A stretch of DNA of 64,000 nt from positions 203,784 through 267,783 of the IMG/VR virus record IMGVR_UViG_3300020188_000808. The stretch is one strand, 5' to 3'. This document shows, piece by piece, positions 26,502 to 46,600 of the stretch. The notes beneath the pieces are model-generated. The model did no database searches and was not told the DNA's origin. It worked only from the letters and a program-made list of their open reading frames with translations. How positions within the stretch are numbered: position 1 is the first letter of the stretch; every line of letters starts with the position of its first letter. The position numbers and the translations under genes are program-made.

Positions 26502-27023
26502 TTATCTCAGGAACTCACGCCAATCCAGGCCAAACTGGATTGAATTTACCTTGTGTACACCTATCAAATATAGCACATATGATGCTACGCTTGATCCACG
26601 TCCTACACCCCATACAATGTCGTTCTCACGCATAAAGTTCACAAGATATATCATATACTGTAGCAAAGGCTTCATACCTCTGCCTTCAAACTCTGCAAGT
26701 TCTTCTGCACATCTTGCTGTTTCTTCTTGTGTAGTACATTTCTCCAGCACCCAATTATGTACATTAATGGCTTTGTATGCGTCAGGCATGAACCATTCAC
26801 TTTGACATACACCGTCAAAAGTCTTTTGATCTACATCTAATGGGATATACTTTTGTAGTTTGCTAAGGCCTTGTTCTTCCATAGCACTATTGAACTTGTC
26901 TACGTCATCACTTGGATCACATAGTACAACGTGTACCTTATCCGCATGACCACTATAGATCATATCAATAAGATCTTTATTAGAAAATCGTGGAATACCT
27001 AAATCGTCAGTTTTCATAAGCAT
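26502..27023 (-). CDS. Stand-alone fragment of DNA polymerase III alpha (DnaE palm region)
   Basis: WGVGRGSSVASYVLYLIGVHKVNSIQFGLDWREFLR matches DnaE GxGRGS...LGIT.VDP....L.FERFL. Confidence 0.85.
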   Translation of the reverse strand: MLMKTDDLGIPRFSNKDLIDMIYSGHADKVHVVLCDPSDDVDKFNSAMEEQGLSKLQKYIPLDVDQKTFDGVCQSEWFMPDAYKAINVHNWVLEKCTTQEETARCAEELAEFEGRGMKPLLQYMIYLVNFMRENDIVWGVGRGSSVASYVLYLIGVHKVNSIQFGLDWREFLR

Positions 27024-27881: not shown

Positions 27882-30800
27882 TTAAACATTATATTGATAG
27901 TTTCCGAATGCAATATATTGCTCATCGCTATTACCTATAGTAGCATCAACAATATATCTATCTATTTCAAAATCTAAATTCTTAAAGTCGAACCCACTAT
28001 TAGTTATATTTAATAAAATCTGTGCCGCTGTTCCTGGTTTACAATAGCATAATGGTACTGCTGTAACATATCCTAATTCTTGTACACCAGAACCTTGTGC
28101 AGTTGACATCCAAATAGGTAAGAAACTACCTTCTGTAACGCCCGCTTGTGCTATATTTTCACGCATATTTGTTACATTACTAATAAAGCGTGTTTGATCG
28201 GTAGAATTACTAATTTGTACAGCATCACTATCTACTTTAAGAGTGTTGTATGTTGGTCTAAATCTAAACGGATCACTACTTGTAGTAGCAATTTGTCCTG
28301 CTTTTAATATAGCACCATTTCTAGTTGTAATTTCAATAGTGCCGTTTGCATCGTATATAACAGATCCTGCTCTAGTAATAATTTCTAAATCGTTACCAAA
28401 CGCTCGAACATTAATAATTTGATTTACACTATTTCTAATTTGGAAAACAGCTTCACCTGCTCCTTCTTTACTAGCATCATCACGTGTTTCGTACTCAACA
28501 CTATCAACTGTAATTTTCTTTTTGTTAGCAATTCCTGTAGTTTTAGCAACCTTTCCAGTCTTTGTATCTAAAGGGTCATTTACATCTACATAAATTACTT
28601 CATACAATACTGTGTTAGTTCCGTTCTCTTTTGCTTCTGCAACTTTCAACTCACCAAATTTAAATCTTTTACGTTTATGATTTTTTCTAGAAGCCGCAAC
28701 ATACTCTTTAATTTCTTTAGTTTCAATACCAGCATATACTAACATCTTAACTTCTTTTTGTAGACCAAACTGTGCATCATTTGGTCTGTAAATACTATTA
28801 GGTGTAAAGATATTACTATCACCTATGAAATTTTTATATATTTGGCGCTGTGTAGTTTTAAATAAAGGTTTAACATATAAGTTACTGTACGTCAAATTGT
28901 CAGGATCTCTTACAACAATGTTAAACGTTCTAGTTGTAGAACTAAACCCAAATCTATCTCTTGCTTGTACTGTGAAAATAAACTTTCTATCAATAGTAGT
29001 TGTACCACCGTCAAGTGTAAATTTATTATTATCAATAGTTGAAAGACCATCTGAAGTAGGTGTTGCAAACTGTACAACTTTACCAACAATTTCACCATCA
29101 AAGTTTAAAGTTAACCCTGGTGGCAATCTACCACTTGATAATGTATAAAGTAATGAACTATCTGTAACACTTGTTAATGCTTCTACAAAAAACGTACTAA
29201 CAAAGTTAGCTTTGATACTGCCTAAGTTTTCTGTAGTTTGCCATTTAATTGTACTTTCAACTTCTCCTAAAATCTTAACTGTAAACGTTTTTCTTTTTTC
29301 AGCAATTAACTCTTGACTGATACTAGTAAAGCGTTGAGCATTAATTGTAAATTTGTATTCTTTTGTAACAGCTGGCTGATAAGGAACACGACCTGCTATT
29401 TCGCCGGTAGTAACATCTAATACTAACCCTGGTGGAATTTCACTTGGAGTATTATCTGGATTAGTTGATTCAAACGTATATGTTAGATCACCTAGTACTG
29501 TTTGAGGATCAAATACATCTAAGAAAATTGTTACGTAATTGTTAGCACGTTTAAACCCTAAGTCTGCTGGTGTTAACCAAACAGGAGTTCTTAAATAAGT
29601 GTTGTCTGCTTTGAATACCCCTGTACCAATTTGCATAACTGTGTTATCTGCACGTAGGAAATCATCACCTACTAAAAATATTTCAAATGATCTTTTAACA
29701 ACAGTATCACCGTCACTTACACTTACATCAAATGCGTATCTTCGATTTAATTTTTTTCTACTTTGTGTTGGGATAGCATCGTCATATCCTTTTGTATCAT
29801 AGTAGTAACTTTCAAAGCCGTTAGCACTTCTTAATCCAAAGTCAAACGCATATGAGTCAAACTGTGTTGCATCATAAAATCCACTACCTGCATTTTTGTC
29901 TATTGCTAGGATAGGGTCAACAATTCCAACTAATCTTCCGTCAGTTGTTAATTGTAATCCTGGTGGTATTTCTCCATCACCGTCGGCAATAAAATATTCT
30001 AATGTTTGTCCAGTTGGTAAGTCAGCATCAATTGCTTCTAATTGGAAGTCAACAATACTACTGTCTAAAATGAATGTAGCACTTCCTCTTCCTAATGGTA
30101 ATAGTCCTTCTGTTGTTGACCATACTGGATCATCAGGACCTTCTATAGTTAGAGTAAATGTTCTATCTCTTAATCCTTCTTCGTTGGTTGCACGTAACAC
30201 AAATTTAAATTCAGTAGTACGTGACACTTCAAAAGGAGTACCAACAATTTTATTTTGTTCTAAACGCATACCCGGAGGTAATTCCCCACTAATTAGTGTA
30301 ACAATATCTGTGTTTAATGTAATAGTAGTTGGGGATCCATCAGATATATAAACGTCTTTTAATACTGATTCTGTATATGTAAAGTAACTTCTTACAATAT
30401 CTCTATACCATAATTCAGTTGTTACATAGTCACTACTTCCACTTGTTTTATAGTGTAGTACTTGACCTGACAAGTATGAGTAATAATATGTACTGTACTG
30501 TCCATAAAATGTTCCTCCAGCATCTGGTATTTGTCCACCAACATATCCTTGAGATAATGCCCATTGATATGCTGTTTCTTGACCGCCTAACCATGTTACT
30601 GGAGTTGTACTATAATTAGGTGCTATGTTATTACTAGGATCAACATAACCTCCAACGTAAGGCATCATATCGTTCGTTGTAGCAACATTTGTGTCACCAT
30701 CAGTACTTTGTATTGTTAATATTCTTTTACCTTGTTTAACAGCCGTATTTGTGTTATAGTCGTCTGCCGAATTACCTGTATTTGCTTCTGATGACGGAAA

Positions 30801-31442
30801 GTAAAAACTACCATTTCTAAACATTGGGTTAAACAGTGGAGCATTAATTGTAGCAAAATCTTTAACGCCAATGTCGTCAATTTCAATCATTGCACGATTA
30901 ACTAACAGTCCGCCGTTATTAATACCAAGTAGTTTGATTTCGTTTGATTCAACATTTGAAAATTTACTAAGTTTATTAATAAGTTGACGTAGCATTTCAA
31001 TGTCTGGTGATTTATTAGTATCTTCGTCAATCACATTCCAATCATTTAACGGTTTGTCAGGAGCAACAATAATATGATCTCCTAAATAATTTTGCCAGTC
31101 GTTGATCATATTAGCACCTGTACTACCCTGAGGGTGTAAAATAATAACAACAGGTATTAGCTTGTTTGATAAAGTAGGAATAGTTGGAACACGTATAGCT
31201 GGGGTTGGATATGTTGTAGTCATACTAGCACCATATTGATCAACATGATCAATACTAATACTAATAGTACTAGCATTACTTAATGCCGATTGTGGTGGAT
31301 AACTTAAACTTTGATTGCTAGGATTATATCCGCTACCGCCGCCTATTGTTGGATCTAACGGCAGTGGAACTGATGCTGTAACTCTTTCTTGTAGAGTTGC
31401 TAAATTATAACCTGATTTTTGAGTCCAACTTGGTACTGCCAT
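27882..31442 (-). CDS. Large baseplate-wedge-like protein with Ig-like (He_PIG) repeats and an inserted alpha/beta-hydrolase-like domain
   Basis: Repeated G.LPPGL.L...G.I.G.P modules, C-terminal FDFKNLDFEIDRYIVD, esterase-like insert at aa ~93-355; late promoter at 31467-31474. Confidence 0.75.
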   Translation of the reverse strand: MAVPSWTQKSGYNLATLQERVTASVPLPLDPTIGGGSGYNPSNQSLSYPPQSALSNASTISISIDHVDQYGASMTTTYPTPAIRVPTIPTLSNKLIPVVIILHPQGSTGANMINDWQNYLGDHIIVAPDKPLNDWNVIDEDTNKSPDIEMLRQLINKLSKFSNVESNEIKLLGINNGGLLVNRAMIEIDDIGVKDFATINAPLFNPMFRNGSFYFPSSEANTGNSADDYNTNTAVKQGKRILTIQSTDGDTNVATTNDMMPYVGGYVDPSNNIAPNYSTTPVTWLGGQETAYQWALSQGYVGGQIPDAGGTFYGQYSTYYYSYLSGQVLHYKTSGSSDYVTTELWYRDIVRSYFTYTESVLKDVYISDGSPTTITLNTDIVTLISGELPPGMRLEQNKIVGTPFEVSRTTEFKFVLRATNEEGLRDRTFTLTIEGPDDPVWSTTEGLLPLGRGSATFILDSSIVDFQLEAIDADLPTGQTLEYFIADGDGEIPPGLQLTTDGRLVGIVDPILAIDKNAGSGFYDATQFDSYAFDFGLRSANGFESYYYDTKGYDDAIPTQSRKKLNRRYAFDVSVSDGDTVVKRSFEIFLVGDDFLRADNTVMQIGTGVFKADNTYLRTPVWLTPADLGFKRANNYVTIFLDVFDPQTVLGDLTYTFESTNPDNTPSEIPPGLVLDVTTGEIAGRVPYQPAVTKEYKFTINAQRFTSISQELIAEKRKTFTVKILGEVESTIKWQTTENLGSIKANFVSTFFVEALTSVTDSSLLYTLSSGRLPPGLTLNFDGEIVGKVVQFATPTSDGLSTIDNNKFTLDGGTTTIDRKFIFTVQARDRFGFSSTTRTFNIVVRDPDNLTYSNLYVKPLFKTTQRQIYKNFIGDSNIFTPNSIYRPNDAQFGLQKEVKMLVYAGIETKEIKEYVAASRKNHKRKRFKFGELKVAEAKENGTNTVLYEVIYVDVNDPLDTKTGKVAKTTGIANKKKITVDSVEYETRDDASKEGAGEAVFQIRNSVNQIINVRAFGNDLEIITRAGSVIYDANGTIEITTRNGAILKAGQIATTSSDPFRFRPTYNTLKVDSDAVQISNSTDQTRFISNVTNMRENIAQAGVTEGSFLPIWMSTAQGSGVQELGYVTAVPLCYCKPGTAAQILLNITNSGFDFKNLDFEIDRYIVDATIGNSDEQYIAFGNYQYNV

Positions 31443-31487
31443 GTTTCATATCCTTTAACTTATTAGTATTTATCGGATATCAAGTGT

Positions 31488-32366
31488 TTAGAATGCACGT
31501 TGTTGTTTAGTACTAGGACCTACGATATATGGGTATACTGGTTGGTTATTTGTATCTACAGTCATAAAGTAAGCATATGTGCCATCTGGATATTCCGGAG
31601 TTTTTGTGAAGCGTCCGTTGTATTGATCCAAAGTTCCTGTACCAATTTGAAATTCGTGATCGTTAACAAATGTTCCTGCTGTTTTTTCTGAATACAAATA
31701 GTCACGACCTGGTCTTTCACTACCATAATATTGATATGAACTTGTCATTCTAATTACTACTGACAAAGGATCGTTAAAGTCTGAATAACCAAATGGTCCG
31801 TAAATAGGATATCCATCAAAACAGTAACCTACAATTTTACTATGACCGTCTGCATGTCTAAACTTATCTCCACCAAAGTCGCTTCCAGCATAATATGTAG
31901 GAGTTGGACTTGCGTCAGTATCAATCATTGTAGTTGACCATGCTGGTCCTGTTTCACTTGATCCTGTTGGTAAAAATAAAAACATTGCTGACATATAATG
32001 ATATTGACCATTTGTTTCTGGCCATCCACCTGCATCGTCACCGCCATAATTTCCTCTAAACTGTACAGCATTATATTCAAATCCTGTAGCTGGTGCATCG
32101 TCAATTGCACTTAGTCCAGGTGGAACAACGCCAACTCCTGAACTTGGTGAGTAAAATACAACACCATTAGACATAATGCCTAGTGGAGTTAGTGCAGTAG
32201 TTAGCTGTGCGTTTGTAGTATTTTCGCCACCTCTAAATGTAAAAGAATAGTTGTATGATTGTGATTGGGCTGTATTTGCACTAGGTGCAAACGCATTATT
32301 GCCAAACGCTTTACCAAATTGTGCTGGATTAGGTAATCCATTTGATGTAATTGTTAAAGTTGCCAT
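31488..32366 (-). CDS. YHYH-domain protein
   Basis: GQYHY, GHSKIVGYCFDGYPIYGP, LDQYNGRF...YPY. Confidence 0.8.
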   Translation of the reverse strand: MATLTITSNGLPNPAQFGKAFGNNAFAPSANTAQSQSYNYSFTFRGGENTTNAQLTTALTPLGIMSNGVVFYSPSSGVGVVPPGLSAIDDAPATGFEYNAVQFRGNYGGDDAGGWPETNGQYHYMSAMFLFLPTGSSETGPAWSTTMIDTDASPTPTYYAGSDFGGDKFRHADGHSKIVGYCFDGYPIYGPFGYSDFNDPLSVVIRMTSSYQYYGSERPGRDYLYSEKTAGTFVNDHEFQIGTGTLDQYNGRFTKTPEYPDGTYAYFMTVDTNNQPVYPYIVGPSTKQQRAF

Positions 32367-32367
32367 A

Positions 32368-33072
32368 TTAGCTTATTACTCCTGCGTCAAAAGTTCTATC
32401 ATCAGGAGTCATATATCCTCCAAAGTCTATATCTGTTTCGTAAAGTAGCCAGTCACTGAAGCCCCTTACATCATTACTTAGCGTTCCAAAATCAAATCCT
32501 GCTGTATTTGGCTCAATACTTCTAATATCAATACCGTATACTAATCCTTGTAAGTTACCTGTAACAGGACCACTAAATTCACTTGCTGTAAATGTTCCGC
32601 CGTTAGTAATATCAAAACCAGCGGCATTTAAGTTTCCGCCTAATTCTGGACTTGTGTCTGTTACAATTTCTGCTGTTGAATTAACAGTTAAAACATTTCC
32701 TGATAATGATGTATTTGCACCTGTACCACCAAAGATACTAAGTGATTGGCCATCTGCAAGTGATATGCTACCTGAATCTGAAACTATAGTTAATGCTTGT
32801 AATCCTCCTGTAGCATTAACTGTAATTCCTTGCGGAGTACTAGTTAGTGTTACATTAGATCCTTGTACTAATTTTTTAAGTTGAATTTCAGCTCCAACCT
32901 TTTGTGAAAATATACCTTCGCCAACATTCCCTACATTGGCAACGGTTGTGCTTTCTGGTGAACGTAGATCTAAATCATCAAAATTTTGATTTACTTTAAT
33001 AAACGCTTCACGAAGATCATCACCTGTTCCGTCGTTTGCTAGTGTACCGATATTAATTGTTTGTAAAGCCAT
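32368..33072 (-). CDS. Baseplate/fibre connector-like protein (T4 gp9/gp10-type N-terminus)
   Basis: INIGTLANDGTGDDLREAFIKVNQNF; late promoter at 33093-33100. Confidence 0.75.
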   Translation of the reverse strand: MALQTINIGTLANDGTGDDLREAFIKVNQNFDDLDLRSPESTTVANVGNVGEGIFSQKVGAEIQLKKLVQGSNVTLTSTPQGITVNATGGLQALTIVSDSGSISLADGQSLSIFGGTGANTSLSGNVLTVNSTAEIVTDTSPELGGNLNAAGFDITNGGTFTASEFSGPVTGNLQGLVYGIDIRSIEPNTAGFDFGTLSNDVRGFSDWLLYETDIDFGGYMTPDDRTFDAGVIS

Positions 33073-33095: not shown

Positions 33096-34718
33096 TTATC
33101 CTTGTCCACTACCACTAGTACCTTTGGCACTAAACTGTATTGGACTATTATAAGGCCAATATGCTATATTACGTGTACCACCATATAATCTAGGTATACT
33201 ATTACTTGCAACAAAACTGTCAGGATTACCTGTATTATATAATTGTTCTTTTGCGTTGTTAGTCAAGAAATCTTTAAATTCTTGTGCTGTGCCTCCCGGA
33301 TTTGCTTGTAACCATAAAGCACCCATTCCTGTTATTTGCGGCGCCGCCATGCTTGTTCCACTAATTCTAGCAATAGAATATGCTGTGTTAGGTGGATAAT
33401 TTTGTTTGGTACTATATGTAGATACATTACTTGTAACACTTGTAATTTGTTCACCAGCGGCATTGATGTCTAATCGAGCACCACGCTCACTATCTTCTCT
33501 TAAAAATTCTTCTGAACCATACTGGTCACATGCCATATTGCCAACCCATACTGTATCTAATGAGTGCGGGCTACTTGGCCTATTATAAAATACAGGCTGT
33601 CCTGCGGCAATGTATCCAGCCCATGTTTCGTTGAGTGTATAATAACTGTCATATATTGTATCAGCATATTGTCCTGCGGATGATCCTGCACAAGGATGAT
33701 ATCCATTACCTGCGGCTTTAACACATATTACTCCGGCATCAGTTAATTGTTCTTGTTCAACATCAGCTGGCGTATATGCCATTGGGTGTCTACTTGCTAC
33801 TGCACCGTATTGTGTAAATGTACCACTAGTCCACGCCTGTGGTGTAATACTTTGATCAACACCTCTATAAAAAATTGATTGAATTTGTGTAGATCCAAAT
33901 TGTGAATTTCTATAATACCAACTATATCCCCAACTTTGATTTACAATAGTAGGACGTTTAAATCCTGTATTTGGATCAATTGGTTTTTGTTCGTGGAATA
34001 ATCTAATTAAATCATAACGATCAGTATCAATACTATGATTAGACCCGCCAAATATTCTCATAGAATAAATTCTTGCATTCTTTGCCCAACCATATGTTTT
34101 ACCAGCGGCAATACCTGTACAATGACTACCATGAGCACCTGCTCTATTTGAATCATTTGATGTGTTAGCATAAAAGCTACTAGGCATTGTTCCTGATAAT
34201 CCAGTTAGTTCGTACCAATCAACTTGTTGGAATCTACTTACTCCATTTGCATCTTCCCATTCAGGGTGATCAACTTGTACACCGTCATCTTGAATAACAA
34301 TGTCTACTCCGGTTCCGTCTAGTGTATAATTGTAATCAGCTGTACGTGTGCTTGAAGAATTATAATCTAAATTTGGATCAATATGTCTTTCTAAACCCCA
34401 GTTAACACTATTTGAACCGTTTACAAAACTTCTTTGAAATTCTGCATTTTGTGTAGCATATAGTTCTTGTGTTTCTATGTCTGGAACTCCTGCTACTGAT
34501 AGTACTCGCGGGTCATTTGATAATGCCGCGGCTTCTTCGTCAGTAAGATCATAATGCGTCATTCTGTTATTAGCAGGCCTAGCATTAATTACTGGTACAC
34601 TTCTATCAGGTACAATACTACTGTTTACAGAGTCATCAGTCGATGTGTCTCTTTGTAAATCGTTATCGACTACTGCAACATCTATGCCTTTTTCTGTAAC
34701 TACAATATATTCAGCCAT
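33096..34718 (-). CDS. Subtilisin-like S8 serine protease
   Basis: GVDIVIQDDG (Asp), HGSHCTG (His), AAGN (oxyanion), GTSMAAP (Ser). Confidence 0.9.
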   Translation of the reverse strand: MAEYIVVTEKGIDVAVVDNDLQRDTSTDDSVNSSIVPDRSVPVINARPANNRMTHYDLTDEEAAALSNDPRVLSVAGVPDIETQELYATQNAEFQRSFVNGSNSVNWGLERHIDPNLDYNSSSTRTADYNYTLDGTGVDIVIQDDGVQVDHPEWEDANGVSRFQQVDWYELTGLSGTMPSSFYANTSNDSNRAGAHGSHCTGIAAGKTYGWAKNARIYSMRIFGGSNHSIDTDRYDLIRLFHEQKPIDPNTGFKRPTIVNQSWGYSWYYRNSQFGSTQIQSIFYRGVDQSITPQAWTSGTFTQYGAVASRHPMAYTPADVEQEQLTDAGVICVKAAGNGYHPCAGSSAGQYADTIYDSYYTLNETWAGYIAAGQPVFYNRPSSPHSLDTVWVGNMACDQYGSEEFLREDSERGARLDINAAGEQITSVTSNVSTYSTKQNYPPNTAYSIARISGTSMAAPQITGMGALWLQANPGGTAQEFKDFLTNNAKEQLYNTGNPDSFVASNSIPRLYGGTRNIAYWPYNSPIQFSAKGTSGSGQG

Positions 34719-34744: not shown

Positions 34745-37195
34745 TTAATCAACAACATATCCTGATTCTCCTGCTAGTCTTGGATCGTCTTGTGCTGGTG
34801 TGTTACCATCTTGGAATATACTTCTAATTGTTGCAAGTGATGGTTTACTAATTATTGGTGCAATGTATGTGTTATGGAATGCATAACCTAACGGATTGTT
34901 TGTTTGAATGCCTGCTTGGGTACGCATATCATCTGTCCACTCTGGAGCAAGACTTCCACCGTCCCATAATTCTGTGTATTCAAACATAGCAAAGTTTAGT
35001 AGGAACAAGTATTCTTTTGCGGCTACTTCAAATGCATCTGCATCTGTTTTCCAATCATCTGGATTTTCTTGATAACCTGATGGATCCCACTTGCCAGCAT
35101 CGTATGCTTCTTCCATTGCGGCATACAAATCACCTGTCTGCCAGTCAGCGGCTAAGAACTGATATAGTTTTATATCGTCTGCAGGTAACCCGTGCATGTG
35201 TAGTGTGTGGAATACGTGTTCAATAACTTCTTGTGCGTCAATGTCACCATCGCCATACCCATCACCAGTTGAGTTTAAATACCATACCATGTCATTTTGT
35301 ACAGTCGTATCAAACAGGTTAGTTAAGTTCCAAGCAAGAACACCTGCATCAGTTAAGAAGTTTGGAGTGTAATCTGCTCCTGCACCTCTTGCTACTCTTT
35401 GTATAGTTGGTAAGCCTGCGTGATAAGTTCCTGCATCACCACGGAGTGTTTTAATTAAATTTCTTTGGTATTCTTCGTTAATGCCTGCACCATTTGGATC
35501 TGTAAATAATTCAAACATACGTGCTACTTTTTCTAACCATGCATCTGGTACTGCTGTTTGTCCACCTACTGTGCCAGCACCCATAACTCTTACACCGTTA
35601 ACAGTAACTTCACGTTTGAAGAAGTCACTGCCGTCACCTGTAACATTAATAATTGGAAAATTACGATATTCTGAGTCTGCTATATCTTTAAAGGTTACAG
35701 CAAAATGCGCCGCAAATGGAAACACCCCTATTCTATTAGATGTTGCATCTGGACTCATTAAATTTCTACTGTTTGCAAAAAATGTACTTGCATTACCTTC
35801 ATCAGTAGAACCTTGAAATAATGCACCTTTGAGTGCATTGTCCTGCCACCATTTACGCAACTGTGCCGGAGACCAACCTGGGTTAAGTTGTAATAATAAA
35901 CAACTCATACCCGATACTTGTGGTGTTGACATACTTGTTCCTGAATAGGTTGCAACTGCTGATGAACTTGTATTTGTAGCACTAACAATATCAGTTCCTG
36001 CTGTATAAACATCTACTCGAGGTCCTTTATCACTTGATGATTGGCAAGCCTCTGATCCTGAATACAACGCACTATCTATATTACCTACCACAATAGTGTC
36101 AGGACCAATATTACCTGCTCCTCTATTATAATAAATTGGATTACCAGAAGCAATACCTCCTGTTGTAATACTACGTAAGATATAATTATCGTAATCTACG
36201 TCACCTGGGTAACAAAGTTTTTGACCTTGGTTACCTGCACTTTTCATATAGTGTACACCTTCGTCCTGCATTTCTTCAACTTCAGCATTTAGGTTGTACA
36301 AGTTAGCATTAAATCTATTTAAAGTATCTCCAATCATTCCGTATGCTGTACTTTTAACAGTACCAACATTTTGACCTCTAAAATTTATAGCAGTCATACT
36401 TGTAAAGTATGCTTTATATCCCCAACTAGCACCAACCACAGTTGGACGCTTAACACCTGTTACAGGGTCAACAGTTTTTGCTCTATGAAATTCTTTAATA
36501 CTATCAAACCATAATGAACTAGGAATAATATCCATAGGCATACAAAAAATATTTGCATTTTTAGCCCAGCCATAATCTTTACCTACAGCAATGCCGCAAC
36601 AATGTGTTGCATGATAACTTGATCCAGATGTATTTGAATAATCAATAGTAGAAATACTACCCATGTTTGGAAGTGTATTCCATTGAAATTCTTGTAAGCG
36701 ACTATTGCCGTCTTTGTCTTGCCATTGTACGTGATCAAATCTAAATTTACTTTCTTGGTGTACGTAGTCAATACCTGTTCCATCTAGATGGTATGGATAA
36801 ACACCACCAATATCAATATTTTGAGAACCTGAACCCCAAGCATTAGCTTCTTGTATGTGTCTACGTAGTCCCCAATTTCCTCTAAGAGTACTACTATTGT
36901 CTCTAGTCCAATTTGCTTCTTGTTCGTAGTCGACCCAGCTTTCGTCCCATTCTAACGGTTCGTTAACTCCGCCAACATCTGGATGGTTTAATAATGCTTG
37001 TGCTTCTTCGTCTGTAAGAGCAACATGAAACATTCGTTTACTAACAGGTCGTTCATTTACAATACTAATAGTTCTATCTGGAACAATGTTACTATCAATA
37101 CCATCATCCATAGATGTGTCTCTGTTAAGATCTGATAATATTAAATTTTTATCAGCACCTTTGTGTAGCGAAACAACATATTCTTTTTCTGACAT
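34745..37195 (-). CDS. Second S8 protease fused to a C-terminal zincin-like domain
   Basis: GIDYVHQES, HATHCCG, SAGN, GTSMSTP; tail EVIEHVFHTLH...AKEYLF. Confidence 0.85.
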   Translation of the reverse strand: MSEKEYVVSLHKGADKNLILSDLNRDTSMDDGIDSNIVPDRTISIVNERPVSKRMFHVALTDEEAQALLNHPDVGGVNEPLEWDESWVDYEQEANWTRDNSSTLRGNWGLRRHIQEANAWGSGSQNIDIGGVYPYHLDGTGIDYVHQESKFRFDHVQWQDKDGNSRLQEFQWNTLPNMGSISTIDYSNTSGSSYHATHCCGIAVGKDYGWAKNANIFCMPMDIIPSSLWFDSIKEFHRAKTVDPVTGVKRPTVVGASWGYKAYFTSMTAINFRGQNVGTVKSTAYGMIGDTLNRFNANLYNLNAEVEEMQDEGVHYMKSAGNQGQKLCYPGDVDYDNYILRSITTGGIASGNPIYYNRGAGNIGPDTIVVGNIDSALYSGSEACQSSSDKGPRVDVYTAGTDIVSATNTSSSAVATYSGTSMSTPQVSGMSCLLLQLNPGWSPAQLRKWWQDNALKGALFQGSTDEGNASTFFANSRNLMSPDATSNRIGVFPFAAHFAVTFKDIADSEYRNFPIINVTGDGSDFFKREVTVNGVRVMGAGTVGGQTAVPDAWLEKVARMFELFTDPNGAGINEEYQRNLIKTLRGDAGTYHAGLPTIQRVARGAGADYTPNFLTDAGVLAWNLTNLFDTTVQNDMVWYLNSTGDGYGDGDIDAQEVIEHVFHTLHMHGLPADDIKLYQFLAADWQTGDLYAAMEEAYDAGKWDPSGYQENPDDWKTDADAFEVAAKEYLFLLNFAMFEYTELWDGGSLAPEWTDDMRTQAGIQTNNPLGYAFHNTYIAPIISKPSLATIRSIFQDGNTPAQDDPRLAGESGYVVD

Positions 37196-39873: not shown

Positions 39874-40695
39874 TTATAGTGCCGCTATTCTTACTTGGAA
39901 GTCAGCAAAGTCGGCACTTGCCGCTACTTCTGTTTTCAGTGTTGTTAAACTAATTGTTTCTGCTTGTAATGCAGTATCCGCCAATGCACCTTGTGCTGAT
40001 GTTGCCGCATCTGTGATTCCATAACCTGATAGTGTAGTTGGTGTACTTGTAATGTCGCCAAATGCAACGGTTGTTAAGAAATTTGTTCCTGTAATAGTAG
40101 CACCTGTAAAGTCTACTGTTGTACCACTTGGATAATCTACTGTGTTAGTTCCACTACCAATAGTAACTGTACCACTTGTAGATCCGCCAATGTCAATACT
40201 AGCCAATGCGGCACCTATTAAAGTAATACCTGCTGTGCCTCCTATTGTAACACCAGTAACTGCACTTGTTGTTACTGTAGCAACTCCAAGTCCGTCATCC
40301 AATGCTGATTGTGTTGGTATTGTTAAATTTGTTAATGCTGAACCATCTAATGCTGGTAAGTTACCTACTAGCACACTAGAGTTAATAGTGCCTGCAACAC
40401 CGTCAATTATTAATGTACTGTTATCAGCAAATACACTACCTGTCACGTCACCGTCTAATGCACCTACAAATGATCCGTAGTGTGTATTAGTAGCTGAACT
40501 ATATGCTAATGAACTATCTTGTGCAAAAATATCACCTTGTATGTCTTGTGCAACGGCAACGCCACCACCTTCAAGTACAACTACTCTAGCATATAAATCT
40601 GTAAAGTTTGCATTAACTTTAGTAAACGCAACTCTAATAGGATCTCCATCACCTTTGTTAGCATATGTGCCAATGTTTATAGTTTGTTGTGCCAT
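39874..40695 (-). CDS. Short fibre/baseplate protein (gp9/gp10-type N-terminus)
   Basis: INIGTYANKGDGDPIRVAFTKVNANF; PTTLSGYGITDA fibre repeat. Confidence 0.75.
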   Translation of the reverse strand: MAQQTINIGTYANKGDGDPIRVAFTKVNANFTDLYARVVVLEGGGVAVAQDIQGDIFAQDSSLAYSSATNTHYGSFVGALDGDVTGSVFADNSTLIIDGVAGTINSSVLVGNLPALDGSALTNLTIPTQSALDDGLGVATVTTSAVTGVTIGGTAGITLIGAALASIDIGGSTSGTVTIGSGTNTVDYPSGTTVDFTGATITGTNFLTTVAFGDITSTPTTLSGYGITDAATSAQGALADTALQAETISLTTLKTEVAASADFADFQVRIAAL

Positions 40696-43600
40696 TATAC
40701 TCTCCCTACCACTGCTTCAACTGTGCCATGACCGGGATCATCTTTGGCTTGTAATGCTTTACCAATTACAGTTCCAACACTAGGGTTTGAACTTGCTATT
40801 GCGTAACCTGGAATACTTGCTGAAACAAGCATATCACCTTTGCGTACTATGCCAACAACATTTACAGGAACTCTACCTTGTAATGCTATTGCAGTAACGT
40901 GTTCGCCTTCTAAACCACTGTTCATTAAGTAACCTGGTTTCTCTGAAACTACACCAGCTACCCTTGTGTCGTCTTTTAATTTTGTACTTGTTAGTTCTTG
41001 TTCACCGCCAAATATCAATACAGTACCAACAGCGTAGTCTTGGTCTGCTAAATAATTCTCTGCTAAGTCAGCATAACGTGATTGTGTTGATGTACCATCT
41101 ATTACCGTTGCATAAACAGTATTGTATCTATTCGAACTTGTACCAATATTATACGTATCGTGTAGTCCTGGTTCAAATCCTGTTGATGTTGTTTTAACAA
41201 CTACTGCACCGTCACTAATTAACGCAATCTGTCCTGCCGCACTATAACCTGTGTTAGCACCAATACCAATACCTGTTGAGTTTGCATCAAGTTCACCTGG
41301 TGCTTCAATAAAGCTACTGTGTATCCAATCAACTGCTAGTCTGCTTTCGCCTGCTAGTGCTGAGTTAGTTTGGAATGATCCTTGTGTAACTCCTGTTGCT
41401 CCAATGTTAACCGATCCTGGAATTTCAATTGTTGGTGTAACTGAACCAGCTGATGTCATAAACAATGCACCACCAGGTGTTGAAAGTTGTATTTCATTAC
41501 CGCTAGTATCTAGTATTAAGTAGTTGTCAACTTTAAGACCTTGTACACTTGCTACTCCAACACCGTCTGTTTTAACAAGAGAGTTTATTGCTCCTGTTGT
41601 ACTAACATTTTCTTGTACACCGCCACCTTCACTAACAATAGTTGCAAATGGAACTTCACTTACATCACCGTTACTTGAGTCACCAGCCGCTCTACCAATT
41701 ACAGTACCGTCGGCAATGTTAATAATTTTTCTATAGTCTAAAGCACCATTGTCAATTGTAATCCAACCACTGTCTGCTGTAAATATATCACTATCAAAAC
41801 TAGCAACACCTAAATCATTCTGTGTAATACCAGTTGCGTTAGCTCTTGTACTTGCAGTTTCTAATGCTAGTTTACTTTGTTGTATACCTGCACTTGCATT
41901 TACATCAGCATTAATAATACTATCAGGTCTAAGTCTTAGATCAACAGTTGCTCCTGTGCCACTTCTAGCAACAACAATATTAACATCTGAACTTGCTAGT
42001 TCAACTAAGTTTGCAAATTCATCAATTGGTCCTGTTTTAACTTGTGCTGACACACCGCCTGCTGTTGAAACAATATCTGAATTTAGTATTGTTCCTGTTA
42101 CTGCGGTGTATGTAATTAAGTTTTCTGCTTCACCATTGCGTGTAACATTTGTAATTTCTACAATAGTACCTGTTGCACTTGATCCGTTACCTGTAATAGT
42201 ATCGCCTGCTACAAAGTTACCACCAGTTGCAGGTTGTGTATAAATTCTAAACTTACCTGTTGAACCAATAAGTTGATTTCCAGCTAACCCATTAGTTTTC
42301 ATATCAATTAATTCAGGAATAGTATCACCGGAATCAATTAACCCGTCAACATAACTCTTAGTTGCCGCTTCTTGATCACTTGACGGATCAGCTAAGTTTG
42401 TAAATGTAAATCCACCAGCGTTGATATTAGCTGTTAAAGATGTTGTACCGTCTCTTGCTAATGCACCTGGACCAATAATATTAGCGTATGGGTTACCACC
42501 GTGGTCCCAACCTAATCTTCTTGCAACATACCCACGTACTGCTGATTCAACCGGAACTGTATCAGTAGCGTTATCAGTCATGCCGTCATCAGCACTAAAT
42601 TCTGCTACAACAACACCACGTTTAAATCCAATACCATCCAAATTACTCAATGCAATCGAAGCACTAAATGTAACTGTACCTGTACCTTGGTCAACTGTAA
42701 AGAACTTACCTACTCTAAAGAAACCGTCTTCATCTGTACTTACGTAGAATACTCTACCCTTATCTCGTTCGTCAACTTGTCTAGCAGTTTGTTTAGGTTG
42801 TGTTGGTTGTCCTAGTACAACATTTGGATAGTTACTTGTGTTAAAGCCACCTGTACCAATGTTTAAGAAGTCATGTCCTGTTGCTCTAGTTGTTGAAATG
42901 TTAACAGTAATGTTACCGCCTTCACCACTAATTAATCCTACTCTCAATGTAACTGTATTAGTTGCATTATAAACTGAACTTACAATACCTGCCGCCGATG
43001 CCGGACTGTTAATGTCTGATCCAGCCAAGTCTTGAATGGCAATAGTACCATAGCCTGTTCTTTGTGTGTATCCTGTAACAGTATGCGTTTTACCATTCCA
43101 GGTAAAGATCATGTCACCTGCATTAAGTTGATCTAATTGTTTCTGTGAGAAAATACTAACAACAGCAATAACATTATCACCTGCTGTAGCACCCATTGTA
43201 GTACCTGTACCAGCATAAGTGCTTAACTGTGAATTTGTTTCGTCAACAACAAGTTTGATATATTCATATGTACTATCAAGTCTAACTTGCTGTGTTCCTG
43301 CCGGTAAAGCATTACCCAATGCGTTTGTAGTATTAAAACTAATAACTCTATAAATTGTATTAGGTTCTTGATCAAATATTAATGCACTACTTGGTCTAGT
43401 TGTTGCAACATCAACTCCTGATAGTTCAAGAGTTTGTCCAATTCTAATAGTACCAATTTGACCGTTTGTTAATACTGCTTTAAGTCCTGTTGTACTAGTT
43501 TGGTTAGCACCTGTTGTTGCCATGTTTAATTTATAAACAGTACTGTTAATAACACCAGTTGGAGGTGATACAGGTTGTGTTATCGCTTCAACAGTTGTAA

Positions 43601-46600
43601 TTTCGTATCTAGTAGTTCCTAATACTCCGCCGTGATCAATTTCAATTTCTGAATTTGTTCTTGGAGGTGTAGCAAACTCGTATGCATATATAAACAGTTG
43701 ATCTTCTGCGTGATCAAAATCGGCACCATCGTCAAAGATTTTAAATGGTGTAGTAAAGTTGTTTCCAGTTGTAATAATGTCCGGAATTTCGTTTGGATCT
43801 GAACCTGTACTTACTAGTCCGTATTCTCCATATGCGTTAGATCCGTTAAGTGATCTAATTTCTGAACCACTGCCTGCATAGTATGCCGCTTGACAATAAT
43901 ATGTAAACTGTGATACAAGCTCTGAAAGTCCTGTGTTAACAGCAACAGTACCGTAACCTAAGTCGTTAACTTGTGTAAAGTCGTTTGCTAACATACTTCT
44001 GTTACCAGCTGTTTGTAACACAATGTTAGTTGGCATAGGTTGATCAAAACCAGTTCCACTATTTGAAGTTGGATCTAATATAAGTGTTGCAGTACCTGCC
44101 GCCTGATCATAACTAGTAATTGCATTTACCTGGAAACGCTTGCCGTTAATATAAAATGGGCTTGGTACTTGTGGACGCTTAATTCTTAGTCCTTCACCTG
44201 CCGCACTTTGTACGTTTAGTGTGAAGTTATCTGTTTTACTGTTTACAACAGTTCGTAAGTTACCAACAAATCCGTCAATAAACATACCGCCTCTAAATGC
44301 TTGTTTATTAATACTCTGTGAGAAACTTGTTCCTGTTTGAATGTATGGTGATTTAGTTAGTACTACTCCTTCTGGATCTAGTACACACATAAAGCCACCG
44401 TGTCCCTGTACACTCATGTTACGTACGATAGTTGCGTCATTCATTAAGAAGACGTCCATATCTTTGTTTTCTTTTGGTGTACTTGAAGCGTTAGTATAAT
44501 CTGTTAAGTAATGGTAACCATAACTTGGTGAGTCAAGTGCTGGTAATACAGCAAGTCCGTTAGTAATAACGTTACCAACCATGTCAAGCAATGTACCAAC
44601 TTGTGTACTTGCCGCCGCTTCAGCCGCTGTAGAGTCAATTGTTTGTGTTGTTCTTATAGGGTTTTGTAAACTTGTATATGTAGCGTTAGCAAAAATATAT
44701 GTTTGAATTATTGCTTTTAGCTGTGCCATTGCGGCTGTAGTTTGTGCTTCTTGTCCGTTAACTAAACTAACAACACCGTCATAATATCTTGATGCATTAA
44801 GATGTGTTTTTTCATTACCACTCCATCTAATATCATATATTAATCCGTCAATGATAATTCCTGCATCTCTTTCACATTTTTGTTTATCGTAAGTAAAGCC
44901 AGCCCAAATTCCAGTACCAATTACAATCTGTGCTTCAATCCAAGCTACAACTTCATCTTTAAGAAATTCTTTGTTTGCAGTTAAGAGTTCAATAGCATTT
45001 GGGTTGTATTCCGGTTTTAATGCAAGACCATCAAATTCAGGTTCTCTATAAAAATAAGTATTAGCCCAAATTGATGTACTTGTACCTGGAGCTGGTTTAA
45101 TATTAACACGTCTAAACTCGTCACCTTTTATTGATACTCCTGCTGGAATCTTAATTGGAAACTGTTCTAAGTATGTACCCGACTCAACATGGATACTGAT
45201 ATCTTTGGTTGAAAACTTATTACCATAATCAATTTCTTCGCCAACTACTGGAGTAATTGGTTCAAGTAATTCTATTTCAATAGTATCAACTGCTGGACCT
45301 CTTGTTGTTGATACAATTCTACCAACTGCTCCAGAAGTCCTAAATGACATTAGTTTGCCTGGTACTAAGTCTTGGTTTGAAATAATGTTTTGGTCAACAT
45401 AACCTTGACCACCATTGGTAATTGTAACAGTCCATGTGCTACCTTCAACTGTTTGTGGAGCACTAGCAATAGTTGGTCCTGTTACGATTGTTTTAACAAT
45501 ATCCCATTTTGCCGCTACTGCTGTTTGTCCAACTAAGTCAACTACTTGTGCCGGAATAGTAACCTGTGTACTAACATTTTGATATAAATTAGTTTCTACT
45601 GTGTTAGTAATAACTTTAGCATGTAGAGCTTTGGCAAAGTTAAGTGACGCTATTGTTTCAGTATATTGTGTACGTCTAGCAATCTGTCCACTTGCACTAC
45701 TGTAATATCTTAATCCAGCATTTCTACTGTGATAGTTTGCAAAGGTTCCATCTAAAATATCTAATACAATACCTTCTGCAATAAATCCTAAATCTCTACG
45801 ACATAATGTTTCGTCATATAATAAGTTTGGAAATTGATCTGCTAGGTATGCAATAGTTTCATCTATAATAAATTGTTTGTTTGCATCTGTAAGAATTTTA
45901 ACTTCTTCATAACCGCTACTACTAGTAACGCCACTTGATGCAACAGTTGAATTAGTTAGCCCATTGCCATATGTAATTCGTTGTTGATAAGGTCCTAAGT
46001 TAACAGGACTTGTTATAATAATTTCTTCTGCTTTTGCCGCCGCGGCCGCAACTGAAGCATATGAATAGTTCCATGAACGACCTTCTTGACCAACTGGAAC
46101 GTTAGCCATTGTATCGTCACCTTTGGTACTTACATATAAGTTTGTTTTAGAAGGGTATGCACTATTGTCTACATAATATTTTGTAACTGCTTGTAAATCT
46201 GTAATACCGCCTGGCGTTCCTGCTCCTGCTTGAGATCCTGGATGATCATGCAAATACAATGCACCTGTCATTGTATCACCTTCACGTCTAGTAATACTCT
46301 TACGTGGTAGTGCTTCAGTACTAATCCAATTACCTGTTAGAGCTGGATCATATTCAGAATCTTGCATTGTCTGTGTGCCAGTTCCTGACCCACTAGGTAT
46401 AGCAATTTTAACTCTTGTTAACTCATCTTCATTTTGTGCTTCTGCTATTGATGTGTGGACACTTAATTGTGTAGCACTTACATATCTTAAATAATAAACG
46501 GTTCCGCTTACAAGTCCAGTAGCATCAGCACCTGTTGAATTGTATCTATAACTAATACCATTAGCAGTTGTTGAGAATCCATGTCCTGCACTTACAACAA

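What the first reader, a model, noticed from the sequence alone, without database searches (positions are those of the whole stretch)
30380..31166. Catalytically dead alpha/beta-hydrolase inserted in the baseplate-wedge-like protein
Seen: PVVIILHPQG...IIVAPD...W...PDIEMLRQLI...IKLLGINNGG...RILTIQST..D.MPYVGG, between the N-terminal segment and the Ig-like repeats. Known: PHB-depolymerase/LpqC-type esterases have LHGxG, a GxSNGG nucleophile elbow, HGxxDxxVPxxGG and a C-terminal His. Here Ser is replaced by Asn (GINNGG, 30909-30926), the oxyanion Gly by Pro, and no catalytic His is evident. Inference: a captured esterase exapted as a binding or structural module on the baseplate, e.g. for acetylated polysaccharide or polyester surfaces.
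Basis: partly seen in the sequence, partly recalled or inferred. Interest (0 to 1): 0.62.

Follow-up and report, generated by a model that had tools for sequence, protein, structure and literature searches.

The report
Dead esterase domain in phage Ig-repeat protein
A large surface-type protein of an uncultured marine jumbo phage carries an esterase-fold domain that has lost its catalytic residues but is still conserved, while sister phages keep the same domain intact, so an enzyme module was probably turned into a non-catalytic binding or structural module.

Summary
It lies on the minus strand, in residues 93-354 of the 1186-aa ORF 27882..31442.

- **Fold.** The modelled domain (pLDDT 86.8) is an alpha/beta-hydrolase. 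Its closest solved structure is Aspergillus oryzae acetyl xylan esterase B (9J07, Z 23.5), followed by a PHB depolymerase.
- **Catalytic residues.** In 85 family representatives, Ser, Asp and His are present in 81, 84 and 84. They align with the 9J07 triad S149/D213/H282. The window has Asn175, Asn257 (with Asp258 next to it) and Ser337, and HG has become HP.
- **Orthologues.** Those with the same architecture form a series: intact triad, Ser to Asp, Ser to Gly, and fully dead (the window's clade).
- **Insertion.** Orthologues of 839-849 aa lack the domain. It sits in a loop of what reads as the first Ig-like repeat.
- **Selection.** dN/dS of the dead domain is 0.14-0.18, no more relaxed relative to the rest of the protein than in intact relatives.

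The "baseplate-wedge" label is not supported. The C-terminal part models as a 2H-phosphoesterase-like fold. Virion location is inferred only from the neighbouring tail-fibre genes.

Most likely this is a former glycan esterase kept as a non-catalytic binding or structural module. I rate it a new variant of a known kind, of moderate interest.

The parts
27882..31442 (-). Whole gene, 1186-aa protein P0001. Order: N-terminal Ig segment, inserted esterase-like domain, He_PIG Ig-like repeats, C-terminal domain.
   Evidence: ORF list and translation. Orthologue P0007 is 59% identical over the full length. More than 2900 relatives of the Ig plus C-terminal part were found.
31350..31442 (-). Residues 1-31. 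This N-terminal segment (W-T ... E-R ... L-P-L) is read as the first strands of the first Ig-like repeat.
   Evidence: The same segment opens the 839-849-aa orthologues, where it is followed within 5-10 residues by the TLI-G-LP-G-L motif. That it forms strands of the Ig repeat is an inference.
30327..31349 (-). The insert, residues 32-372: a Gly/Ser/Pro-rich linker plus the esterase-like domain. It is absent from the short orthologues.
   Evidence: BLASTP of P0001 against P0183 and P0199 aligns residues 6-29 and 366/381-1186 only. No esterase profile hit was found in 91 of the 120 orthologues listed. GC is 34.8% against 33.4% for the rest of the gene.
30363..31271 (-). Alpha/beta-hydrolase-fold domain, about residues 58-360.
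   Evidence: AF2 model with pLDDT 86.8 and pTM 0.89. Foldseek top hit 9j07. VIA Z 23.5, rmsd 2.6 over 236 aa to 9j07, and Z 20.5 to PHB depolymerase 8daj. Family profile against 9j07, E 7.7e-22.
31131..31136 (-). His103-Pro104. The family's invariant H-G motif of the oxyanion loop has become H-P.
   Evidence: Column counts: His 85/85, Gly 82/85. Codons verified.
30909..30926 (-). Nucleophile elbow G-I-N-N-G-G. Asn175 (30918-30920) stands where the family has the nucleophile Ser.
   Evidence: Column has Ser in 81/85 and aligns with S149 of AoAxeB (triad given in PMC12103068). In the model it lies between strand 95-105 and helix 107-118.
30669..30698 (-). Acid loop: an 8-residue insertion (residues 249-256) followed by Asn257-Asp258. 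The family Asp column aligns with Asn257.
   Evidence: Asp in 84/85. The insertion is specific to the window's clade. This stretch of the model has low pLDDT, about 55.
30432..30434 (-). Ser337, at the position of the catalytic His.
   Evidence: His in 84/85, aligning with H282 of AoAxeB. Within the window's clade this position varies (S, I, N, A).
28908..30326 (-). He_PIG-type Ig-like repeats, about residues 373-845.
   Evidence: Pfam PF05345, E 5.6e-16, 4 stretches.
27885..28907 (-). C-terminal domain, about residues 846-1186. Modelled as a 2H-phosphoesterase-like fold with a beta-rich insertion, and it contains only one His.
   Evidence: AF2 model with pLDDT 75.8. VIA wide search: the top 20 hits are all 2H enzymes, Z 11.1 down to 7.3, then a drop to 4.2. 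No H-x-T/S motif is present.
31488..32366 (-). Upstream neighbour, a 292-aa YHYH-domain protein. In cyanophages, YHYH and the esterase domain form one protein.
   Evidence: Pfam PF14240, E 8.9e-37. phrog_2576 positions 13-283 match this ORF and positions 316-565 match P0001. The intergenic 45 nt hold several in-frame stops.

Best explanation
P0001 is a large Ig-repeat protein encoded at the end of the tail-fibre / host-recognition gene cluster of an uncultured marine jumbo phage. An esterase module of the Esterase_phb / acetyl-xylan-esterase type was inserted into a loop of what reads as its first Ig-like repeat.

In sister lineages the module keeps Ser-Asp-His. There it most likely acts as a carbohydrate (de-O-acetylating) esterase on the host surface.

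In the window's lineage the nucleophile Ser (Asn175), the His (Ser337), the positional Asp (Asn257) and the HG motif (HP) are all replaced. Serine-hydrolase chemistry is therefore abolished. The fold is nevertheless kept under purifying selection.

The module most likely now works without catalysis. It would either hold on to the former substrate, a surface glycan, without cleaving it (lectin-like), or act as a structural or assembly module.

Shown: the fold, the loss of the triad, the status as an insert, and the selection. Inferred: the virion location, the glycan ligand, and binding as the retained function.
For: - **Fold:** AF2 pLDDT 86.8. VIA Z 23.5 to 9j07 and Z 20.5 to 8daj. Foldseek E 2e-08.
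- **Homology:** the family profile hits 9j07 at E 7.7e-22, with the family's Ser, Asp and His aligned to S149, D213 and H282 (the triad is defined in PMC12103068).
- **Loss of the triad:** column counts. Orthologues run from intact, to Ser to Asp, to Ser to Gly, to fully dead.
- **History:** on a tree built from the carrier part, all eight proteins of the window's super-clade lack Ser (support 95). The Ser-to-Asp forms sit in a different clade, so there were at least two independent losses.
- **Insert:** 839-849-aa orthologues lack the domain, and the N-terminal segment is conserved.
- **Selection:** dN/dS of the dead domain is 0.14-0.18 against 0.095 for the rest of the protein (ratio 1.5-1.9). 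In intact-domain relatives it is 0.18-0.26 against 0.13-0.17 (ratio 1.4-1.6).
- **Glycan theme:** other variants of the carrier bear a CBM_5_12 module or a fused YHYH domain. YHYH domains are discussed as carbohydrate-binding / host-recognition modules of marine myophage structural proteins (PMC7029224).
- **Virion link:** neighbours are gp9/10-N-like adaptor proteins and a 2161-aa tail-fibre protein. Another family member (P0022) has a below-cut-off match to the Pfam Baseplate_wedge family next to its esterase domain.
Against: - There is no direct evidence that the protein is in the virion. The carrier has no PHROG match, and its C-terminal fold is 2H-phosphoesterase-like.
- No ligand is known, even for the intact relatives.
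- Asp258 lies next to the positional Asp, and the loop is poorly modelled, so the state of the acid residue is ambiguous.
- Purifying selection would also be expected if the domain were needed only for folding or assembly of the split Ig repeat.
- dN/dS comes from a few pairwise Nei-Gojobori estimates, not from a branch model.
Confidence: 0.6

Rival explanations
1. Purely structural spacer. After catalysis was lost, the domain is kept only because the first Ig repeat is split around it, or because it contacts other virion parts. It has no ligand of its own.
For: Purifying selection fits this reading as well as it fits binding. Two clade-specific insertions flank the former active-site loop and may fill the pocket. 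The position of the former His is free to vary (S, I, N, A).
Against: Orthologues without any domain at this site are abundant and diverse, so the Ig repeat does not need it. Other variants place carbohydrate-binding modules in the same protein, which points to a ligand-directed role.
Confidence: 0.25
2. Still an enzyme. It would have a non-canonical active site, for example using Asp258 or other residues, or it would act on a different substrate.
For: Asp258 is adjacent to the canonical acid position. Related proteins with Ser to Asp keep His and Asp. Alpha/beta-hydrolases with an Asp nucleophile exist (my own knowledge: haloalkane dehalogenases, epoxide hydrolases).
Against: In the window Asn, not Asp, stands at the elbow. 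The His is absent and its position varies within the clade. The HG motif has become HP. Only three His remain in the domain, and none is at the His loop.
Confidence: 0.05
3. A decaying remnant on its way to deletion, with no function.
For: Stepwise loss of Ser, then His and Asp, across the super-clade. Between clades the domain diverges faster than the carrier: 35-48% identity against 63-75%.
Against: dN/dS of 0.14-0.18, with no frameshifts, stops or deletions in eight clusters spanning 84-100% identity. Relative to the rest of the protein, constraint is about the same as in intact-domain relatives.
Confidence: 0.1

Closest known systems
Aspergillus oryzae acetyl xylan esterase B (AoAxeB, PDB 9J07; ESTHER family Esterase_phb, between Esterase_phb and FaeC)
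   Same: Same fold: VIA Z 23.5, rmsd 2.6 over 236 aa. Family profile E 7.7e-22 with the motifs H-G, G-x-S-N-G, D-x-x-I-P-Y-x-G-G and G-H aligned.
   Different: AoAxeB is an active secreted enzyme with triad S149/D213/H282 (PMC12103068). The window has N, N(D) and S at these sites and H-P for H-G, and the domain is nested in a phage Ig-repeat protein. Pfam PF10503 does not match the window's domain.
Cyanophage S-SSM4 CYXG_00060 and relatives (phrog_2576), YHYH + esterase proteins of about 590 aa
   Same: 37% identity over the domain, E 2e-42. A YHYH partner is also present in the window, as the adjacent gene.
   Different: S-SSM4 keeps LHGSGG, GVSNGA, the Asp and the G-H motif. There the esterase is the C-terminal half of a YHYH protein. 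Here it is inserted into a different protein and is dead.
Same-architecture orthologues from marine metagenomes (for example P0168, P0169; named 'poly(3-hydroxybutyrate) depolymerase', COG3509, by JGI and Tara)
   Same: Identical domain order and synteny: two S8 peptidase genes, a 234-aa gene, YHYH, this gene, a 190-aa gene, a 77-aa gene, then a DNA_pol3_alpha fragment. The carrier part is 63-75% identical.
   Different: They retain Ser, Asp, His and HG. The window's clade does not, and it has two extra loop insertions near the former active site.
Virion-borne acetyl esterases of phage tail spikes and fibres (Vi-phage acetyl esterase domain, Pickard et al. 2010, cited in PMC7029224; phage G7C gp63.1, from my own knowledge)
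   Same: They are a functional model for the intact orthologues: an esterase on a host-recognition protein that modifies an acetylated surface glycan.
   Different: Those are SGNH-fold enzymes and are active. This is an alpha/beta-hydrolase fold and is inactive.
Cholinesterase-like adhesion molecules (neuroligins and similar), alpha/beta-hydrolase pseudoenzymes (my own knowledge; neuroligin chains appear only as very weak hits)
   Same: An alpha/beta-hydrolase fold that lost the nucleophile and is kept as a binding module.
   Different: A different branch of the superfamily. They are eukaryotic and bind protein ligands. There is no evidence of common descent beyond the superfamily.

Membership tests
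alpha/beta-hydrolase fold superfamily | Central beta-sheet flanked by helices, with a strand-turn-helix 'nucleophile elbow'. | tested here: met
   AF2 model pLDDT 86.8. All 1000 re-aligned PDB chains are alpha/beta-hydrolases at Z of 8 or more, top Z 23.5. The elbow G-I-N-N-G lies between strand 95-105 and helix 107-118 of the model.
Esterase_phb / CE1-like serine esterases (PHB depolymerase, LpqC, acetyl xylan and feruloyl esterases) | Sequence membership in the curated model (Pfam PF10503). | tested here: not met
   No Pfam hit for the window's domain at E up to 1. Only 1 of 85 family members touches PF10503. The family is a distinct sister group: its profile hits AoAxeB at E 7.7e-22 and 8daj at E 5.8e-05.
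Esterase_phb / CE1-like serine esterases | Catalytic triad Ser (in G-x-S-x-G), Asp and His. | tested here: not met
   Asn175, Asn257 (Asp258 adjacent) and Ser337 stand at columns that are Ser 81/85, Asp 84/85 and His 84/85. These columns align with S149, D213 and H282 of 9J07.
Esterase_phb / CE1-like serine esterases | H-G-x oxyanion loop. | tested here: not met
   The window has H-P-Q. Gly is present in 82/85 family members.
Esterase_phb / CE1-like serine esterases | Hydrolytic activity on esters. | not testable with these tools
   This needs an enzyme assay.
phrog_2576 (cyanophage YHYH-esterase proteins, function unknown) | Profile match. | tested here: met
   E 6.2e-41, but only to profile positions 316-565 of 587. 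The YHYH half matches the upstream ORF instead.
He_PIG Ig-like repeat proteins (PF05345) | Pfam match above the gathering score. | tested here: met
   40.8 bits against a cut-off of 24 for the whole protein. Four stretches at E 5.6e-16 in residues 370-800.
T4-type baseplate wedge proteins (gp6, gp7, gp8, gp10, gp11, gp25, gp53) | Sequence or fold similarity to a wedge subunit. | tested here: not met
   No Pfam or PHROG wedge family for P0001 or its parts. The C-terminal model gives no Foldseek PDB hit at E 0.001 or better, and VIA gives 2H phosphoesterases. The Ig-repeat part was not folded.
2H phosphoesterase superfamily (C-terminal domain of the same protein) | Two H-x-T/S-x motifs. | tested here: not met
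   There is a fold resemblance, Z 11.1 to 7.3 for 20 2H enzymes. But residues 840-1186 hold only one His and no H-x-T/S motif.

The most novel reading that the evidence does not exclude
Within one orthologous surface protein of widespread marine jumbo phages, a receptor-modifying esterase has been converted at least twice into a non-catalytic module. One route is Ser to Asp. The other is Ser to Gly or Asn followed by loss of His and Asp. The window's lineage is the fully converted end-point, and the module there works as a lectin-like adhesin for the glycan that its ancestors cleaved. This would be a natural enzyme-to-adhesin series that could identify the unknown host receptor. A further possibility is that the Ser-to-Asp relatives, which keep His and Asp, use an Asp nucleophile and perform a different reaction.
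Probability: 0.3. Interest if true: 0.6.

Novelty: new variant of a known kind. Interest (0 to 1): 0.42.

Why it matters
Phage host-recognition proteins often carry enzymes that cut or deacetylate surface glycans. Natural cases where such an enzyme is switched off but kept are rarely documented with a full set of intermediates.

Here one protein family supplies every stage:
- forms without the domain;
- forms with an intact domain;
- forms lacking only the nucleophile;
- fully dead forms.

All come from abundant but uncultured marine phages. That makes it a ready test system for how a receptor-destroying activity turns into plain binding. It also shows that one loop of an Ig-like repeat accepts whole foreign domains. 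For annotation there is a practical warning: the names 'PHB depolymerase' or 'esterase' should not be transferred to the window's clade.

Tried and rejected
- **Plus-strand reading of the given span.** It gives only stops. The gene is on the minus strand.
- **Pfam on the window's domain.** Nothing at E up to 1.
- **phmmer of the domain against PDB sequences.** Nothing significant, best E 0.17 to unrelated capsid proteins.
- **Megablast of the gene against phage genomes.** No match.
- **Word-based protein search with residues 40-380.** One hit only. For that reason I used the exhaustive representative search.
- **Read-through or a broken fusion with the upstream in-frame YHYH gene.** Rejected. 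Several in-frame stops and a ribosome-binding-site-like sequence lie between the two genes, and the two-gene layout is conserved in relatives.
- **A second, intact esterase copy elsewhere in the 267,783-base record that could supply the activity.** None found with the family profile. The record is only about 75% complete.
- **Recent foreign origin of the insert judged by composition.** GC is 34.8% against 33.4%, so there is no signal.
- **Baseplate-wedge identity of the carrier.** No Pfam or PHROG match, and no Foldseek PDB match for the C-terminal model.
- **tblastn of the carrier part against cultured phages.** Only weak matches, at 24-29% identity, to Atu_ph07 and Phosso proteins annotated as proteases.
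- **Not attempted.** Read mapping, other genetic codes and complex prediction were not needed. I could not measure distances inside the model, because no coordinates were available, to exclude an alternative triad in 3D.
Full report
**1. Where the feature lies**

The span 30380-31166 is open only on the minus strand (one search shows stops on the plus strand). It lies in ORF 27882..31442, which encodes the 1186-aa protein P0001, and covers residues 93-354. GINNGG is encoded at 30909-30926 exactly as stated.

The window is part of an IMG/VR virus record of 267,783 bases, estimated 75% complete. Window GC is 36%.

The neighbouring genes on the same strand are:
- a 2161-aa tail-fibre protein;
- proteins with T4 gp9/10-like N-termini;
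- two S8-peptidase-domain proteins;
- a 292-aa YHYH protein directly upstream;
- replication genes downstream.

**2. What the domain is**

Pfam sees nothing in the domain itself. PHROGs gives phrog_2576 at E 6e-41, but only for profile positions 316-565. Positions 13-283 of the same profile match the upstream YHYH ORF.

In cyanophage S-SSM4 the two halves form one 590-aa protein. Its esterase half is 37% identical to the window's domain (E 2e-42) and carries LHGSGG, GVSNGA, an Asp before IPYTGG, and G-H.

The word-based search gave a single relative and Pfam left the domain open. I therefore ran the exhaustive representative search, which gave 263 relatives at E up to 0.001. An alignment of 85 full-length domains (A1) was used for the tests below.

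- **Sequence link to a solved enzyme.** As a profile, A1 hits Aspergillus oryzae acetyl xylan esterase B (9j07) at E 7.7e-22 over the whole domain. Weaker hits include feruloyl esterases and a PHB-depolymerase-family esterase.
- **Model.** As an MSA, A1 gave an AlphaFold2 model with pLDDT 86.8 and pTM 0.89.
- **Fold search.** Foldseek ranks 9j07/9j08 first, followed by a feruloyl esterase, acyl-protein thioesterases and PHB depolymerase 8daj.
- **Second aligner.** VIA-align gives Z 23.5 (rmsd 2.6, 236 residues) to 9j07 and Z 20.5 to 8daj.

The fold claim is therefore confirmed. The 'PHB-depolymerase / LpqC-type' placement is right at the level of the ESTHER Esterase_phb neighbourhood (PMC12103068). 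The Pfam model PF10503 is not matched, however.

Several of the closest cellular relatives (five of the ten I scanned with Pfam) carry a T9SS sorting domain, so they are secreted enzymes.

**3. Is it catalytically dead?**

The AoAxeB paper defines the triad as S149, D213 and H282. [quoted passage not shown] In the profile alignment these residues coincide with the family's conserved Ser, Asp, His, H-G-x and S-N positions.

| Position | Family (85 representatives) | Window |
|---|---|---|
| Nucleophile Ser | Ser 81 | Asn175 |
| Acid Asp | Asp 84 | Asn257 (Asp258 follows) |
| Base His | His 84 | Ser337 |
| Gly of H-G | Gly 82 | Pro104 |

Additional points:
- An 8-residue, clade-specific insertion precedes the acid loop, and that loop is poorly modelled.
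- In the model, Asn175 sits at the strand-turn-helix elbow, and Ser337 sits in the loop after the last core strand.
- The window's domain is the only one of the 85 lacking His, and one of four lacking Ser.
- The domain has only three His, and none is in the His loop.

Canonical serine-hydrolase chemistry is excluded on sequence grounds. I could not inspect model coordinates, so an unconventional site is excluded only by argument.

**4. Is it an insert, and into what?**

A search with residues 380-1186 found at least 2964 relatives. Among the best 120:
- 29 carry the esterase domain (lengths 1014-1269 aa; 27 of them are 1160-1194 aa);
- 91 do not. Most of these are 839-849 aa, and others are about 1000 or 1090 aa;
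- three of about 1300 aa have a YHYH domain fused in front;
- one has a CBM_5_12 module.

The short forms open with the same 30-residue segment as P0001. They continue within 5-10 residues into the TLI-G-LP-G-L motif, which P0001 reaches only at residue about 383. The domain plus a linker (residues 32-372) therefore sits in a loop of the first repeat.

That this repeat is He_PIG-like follows from its motif and from internal-repeat matches. I did not fold it.

On a tree of the carrier part, domain-bearing and domain-less proteins are separated by a branch with 98% support. This fits a single gain, although a single loss cannot be excluded.

In P0166 the same site holds a further stretch of about 100 aa (read as cupredoxin-like from its motifs, my reading) before the esterase. 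The loop is therefore a hot-spot for accessory modules.

**5. The series of orthologues**

Among same-architecture orthologues:
- **Intact Ser/Asp/His:** thirteen, including P0168 and P0169, which JGI and Tara name 'poly(3-hydroxybutyrate) depolymerase' / COG3509.
- **Ser to Asp, with Asp and His kept:** five.
- **Ser to Gly:** P0163.
- **Ser to Gly and His to Asn:** P0165.
- **All three residues lost:** P0164.
- **The window's clade (P0001, P0156-P0162):** Asn at the Ser position, no His, H-P in place of H-G, and two extra loop insertions.

On the carrier tree, the window's clade and P0163-P0165 form one clade (support 95) in which every member lacks Ser. The Ser-to-Asp forms sit in another clade among intact ones. 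The nucleophile was therefore lost at least twice.

**6. Is the dead domain still selected?**

Within the window's clade the domain is 84-97% identical, against 87-99% for the Ig and C-terminal parts of the carrier.

| Clade | dN/dS, domain | dN/dS, rest of protein | Ratio |
|---|---|---|---|
| Dead clade (three pairs) | 0.14-0.18 | 0.095 | 1.5-1.9 |
| Intact clade (two pairs) | 0.18-0.26 | 0.13-0.17 | 1.4-1.6 |

These are pairwise Nei-Gojobori estimates. The dead domain is under purifying selection, and it is not visibly more relaxed than active relatives. No frameshifts or stops occur in any of the eight clusters.

The 267,783-base record holds no second copy of the family.

**7. The carrier protein**

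The label 'baseplate-wedge-like' is not supported.
- Only He_PIG repeats are recognised.
- No PHROG matches the carrier.
- Cultured phages give only weak matches, to Atu_ph07 and Phosso proteins annotated as proteases.

I folded residues 840-1186 (pLDDT 75.8).
- Foldseek finds no PDB match at E 0.001 or better.
- BFVD shows the same C-terminal module in 'Ig' proteins of uncultured tailed phages, in Atu_ph07 and in Klebsiella phage K64-1.
- The exhaustive VIA search returns twenty 2H phosphoesterases (Usb1, CPDase, LigT-like, phage Acb1) at Z 11.1-7.3, then drops to 4.2.
- The region has a single His and no H-x-T/S motif.

It may therefore be a second enzyme-derived, non-catalytic module in the same protein.

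Virion location rests on three indirect points:
- the position in the tail-fibre cluster;
- Ig-like repeats, which in phages are typically on structural proteins (my own knowledge);
- relatives of the esterase family found next to a below-cut-off Baseplate_wedge match (P0022) or fused to YHYH domains.

**8. Interpretation**

The best reading is that a virion-surface esterase that once modified a host glycan was switched off in this lineage. It was kept either as a non-catalytic ligand-binding module or as a structural module. The rivals are a pure spacer, a non-canonical enzyme, and a decaying remnant. They are weighed in the report sections.

The finding is a new variant of known kinds: esterases on phage host-recognition proteins, and alpha/beta-hydrolase pseudoenzymes. 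Its main value is the complete natural series of states in one orthologous protein of abundant marine phages.

Noticed in passing
window 27885-28925 (minus strand), residues 840-1186 of the same protein: The C-terminal domain models as a 2H-phosphoesterase-like fold: Usb1, CPDase, LigT and phage Acb1 at Z 11.1-7.3, then a drop to 4.2. It has only one His (invariant, in K-N-H-K-R-K-R) and no H-x-T/S motifs. This may be a second enzyme-derived, non-catalytic module. The same module occurs in proteins of Atu_ph07 and Klebsiella phage K64-1.
   Followed up: partly
window 31488-32366 (minus strand) and 31443-31487: The upstream 292-aa YHYH protein is in the same frame as the esterase-bearing gene but is separated from it by several stops. 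In cyanophages YHYH and the esterase are one protein (phrog_2576). In other relatives (P0253, about 1300 aa) YHYH is fused to the front of the Ig-repeat protein. The modules are being shuffled between adjacent genes.
   Followed up: partly
window 32368-33072, 39874-40695, 40695-47180 (minus strand): Three proteins (234 aa, 273 aa and the 2161-aa tail-fibre protein) share a nearly identical N-terminal stretch of about 35 residues, of the T4 gp9/10 N-terminal type. This suggests several different fibres or adaptors dock to the same baseplate site.
   Followed up: partly
window 33096-34718 and 34745-37195 (minus strand): Two tandem Peptidase_S8 (subtilase) domain proteins lie inside the tail-fibre cluster, and they are conserved in relatives. 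The 540-aa one shows H-G-S and G-T-S-M-A motifs, so it looks catalytically competent. The 816-aa one lacks an H-G-T/S motif.
   Followed up: partly
relatives P0174, P0175, P0182, P0260, P0007 (for example P0007 residues 76-342): Orthologues with G-F-D-T-G at the elbow (Ser to Asp) keep the Asp and His of the triad. Whether these are dead or use an Asp nucleophile is open.
   Followed up: no
relatives P0006 and P0008 (786 and 755 aa): These are secreted proteins with a T9SS sorting domain and two tandem copies of the esterase family. In P0006 the second copy has Ser to Gly while the first is intact.
   Followed up: no
window 26502-27023 (minus strand): A 173-aa ORF matches only a fragment of DNA polymerase III alpha (phrog_11127; PF07733 in relatives). 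It is conserved at the same place in related contigs, so it is a stand-alone polymerase-fragment gene rather than a break.
   Followed up: no
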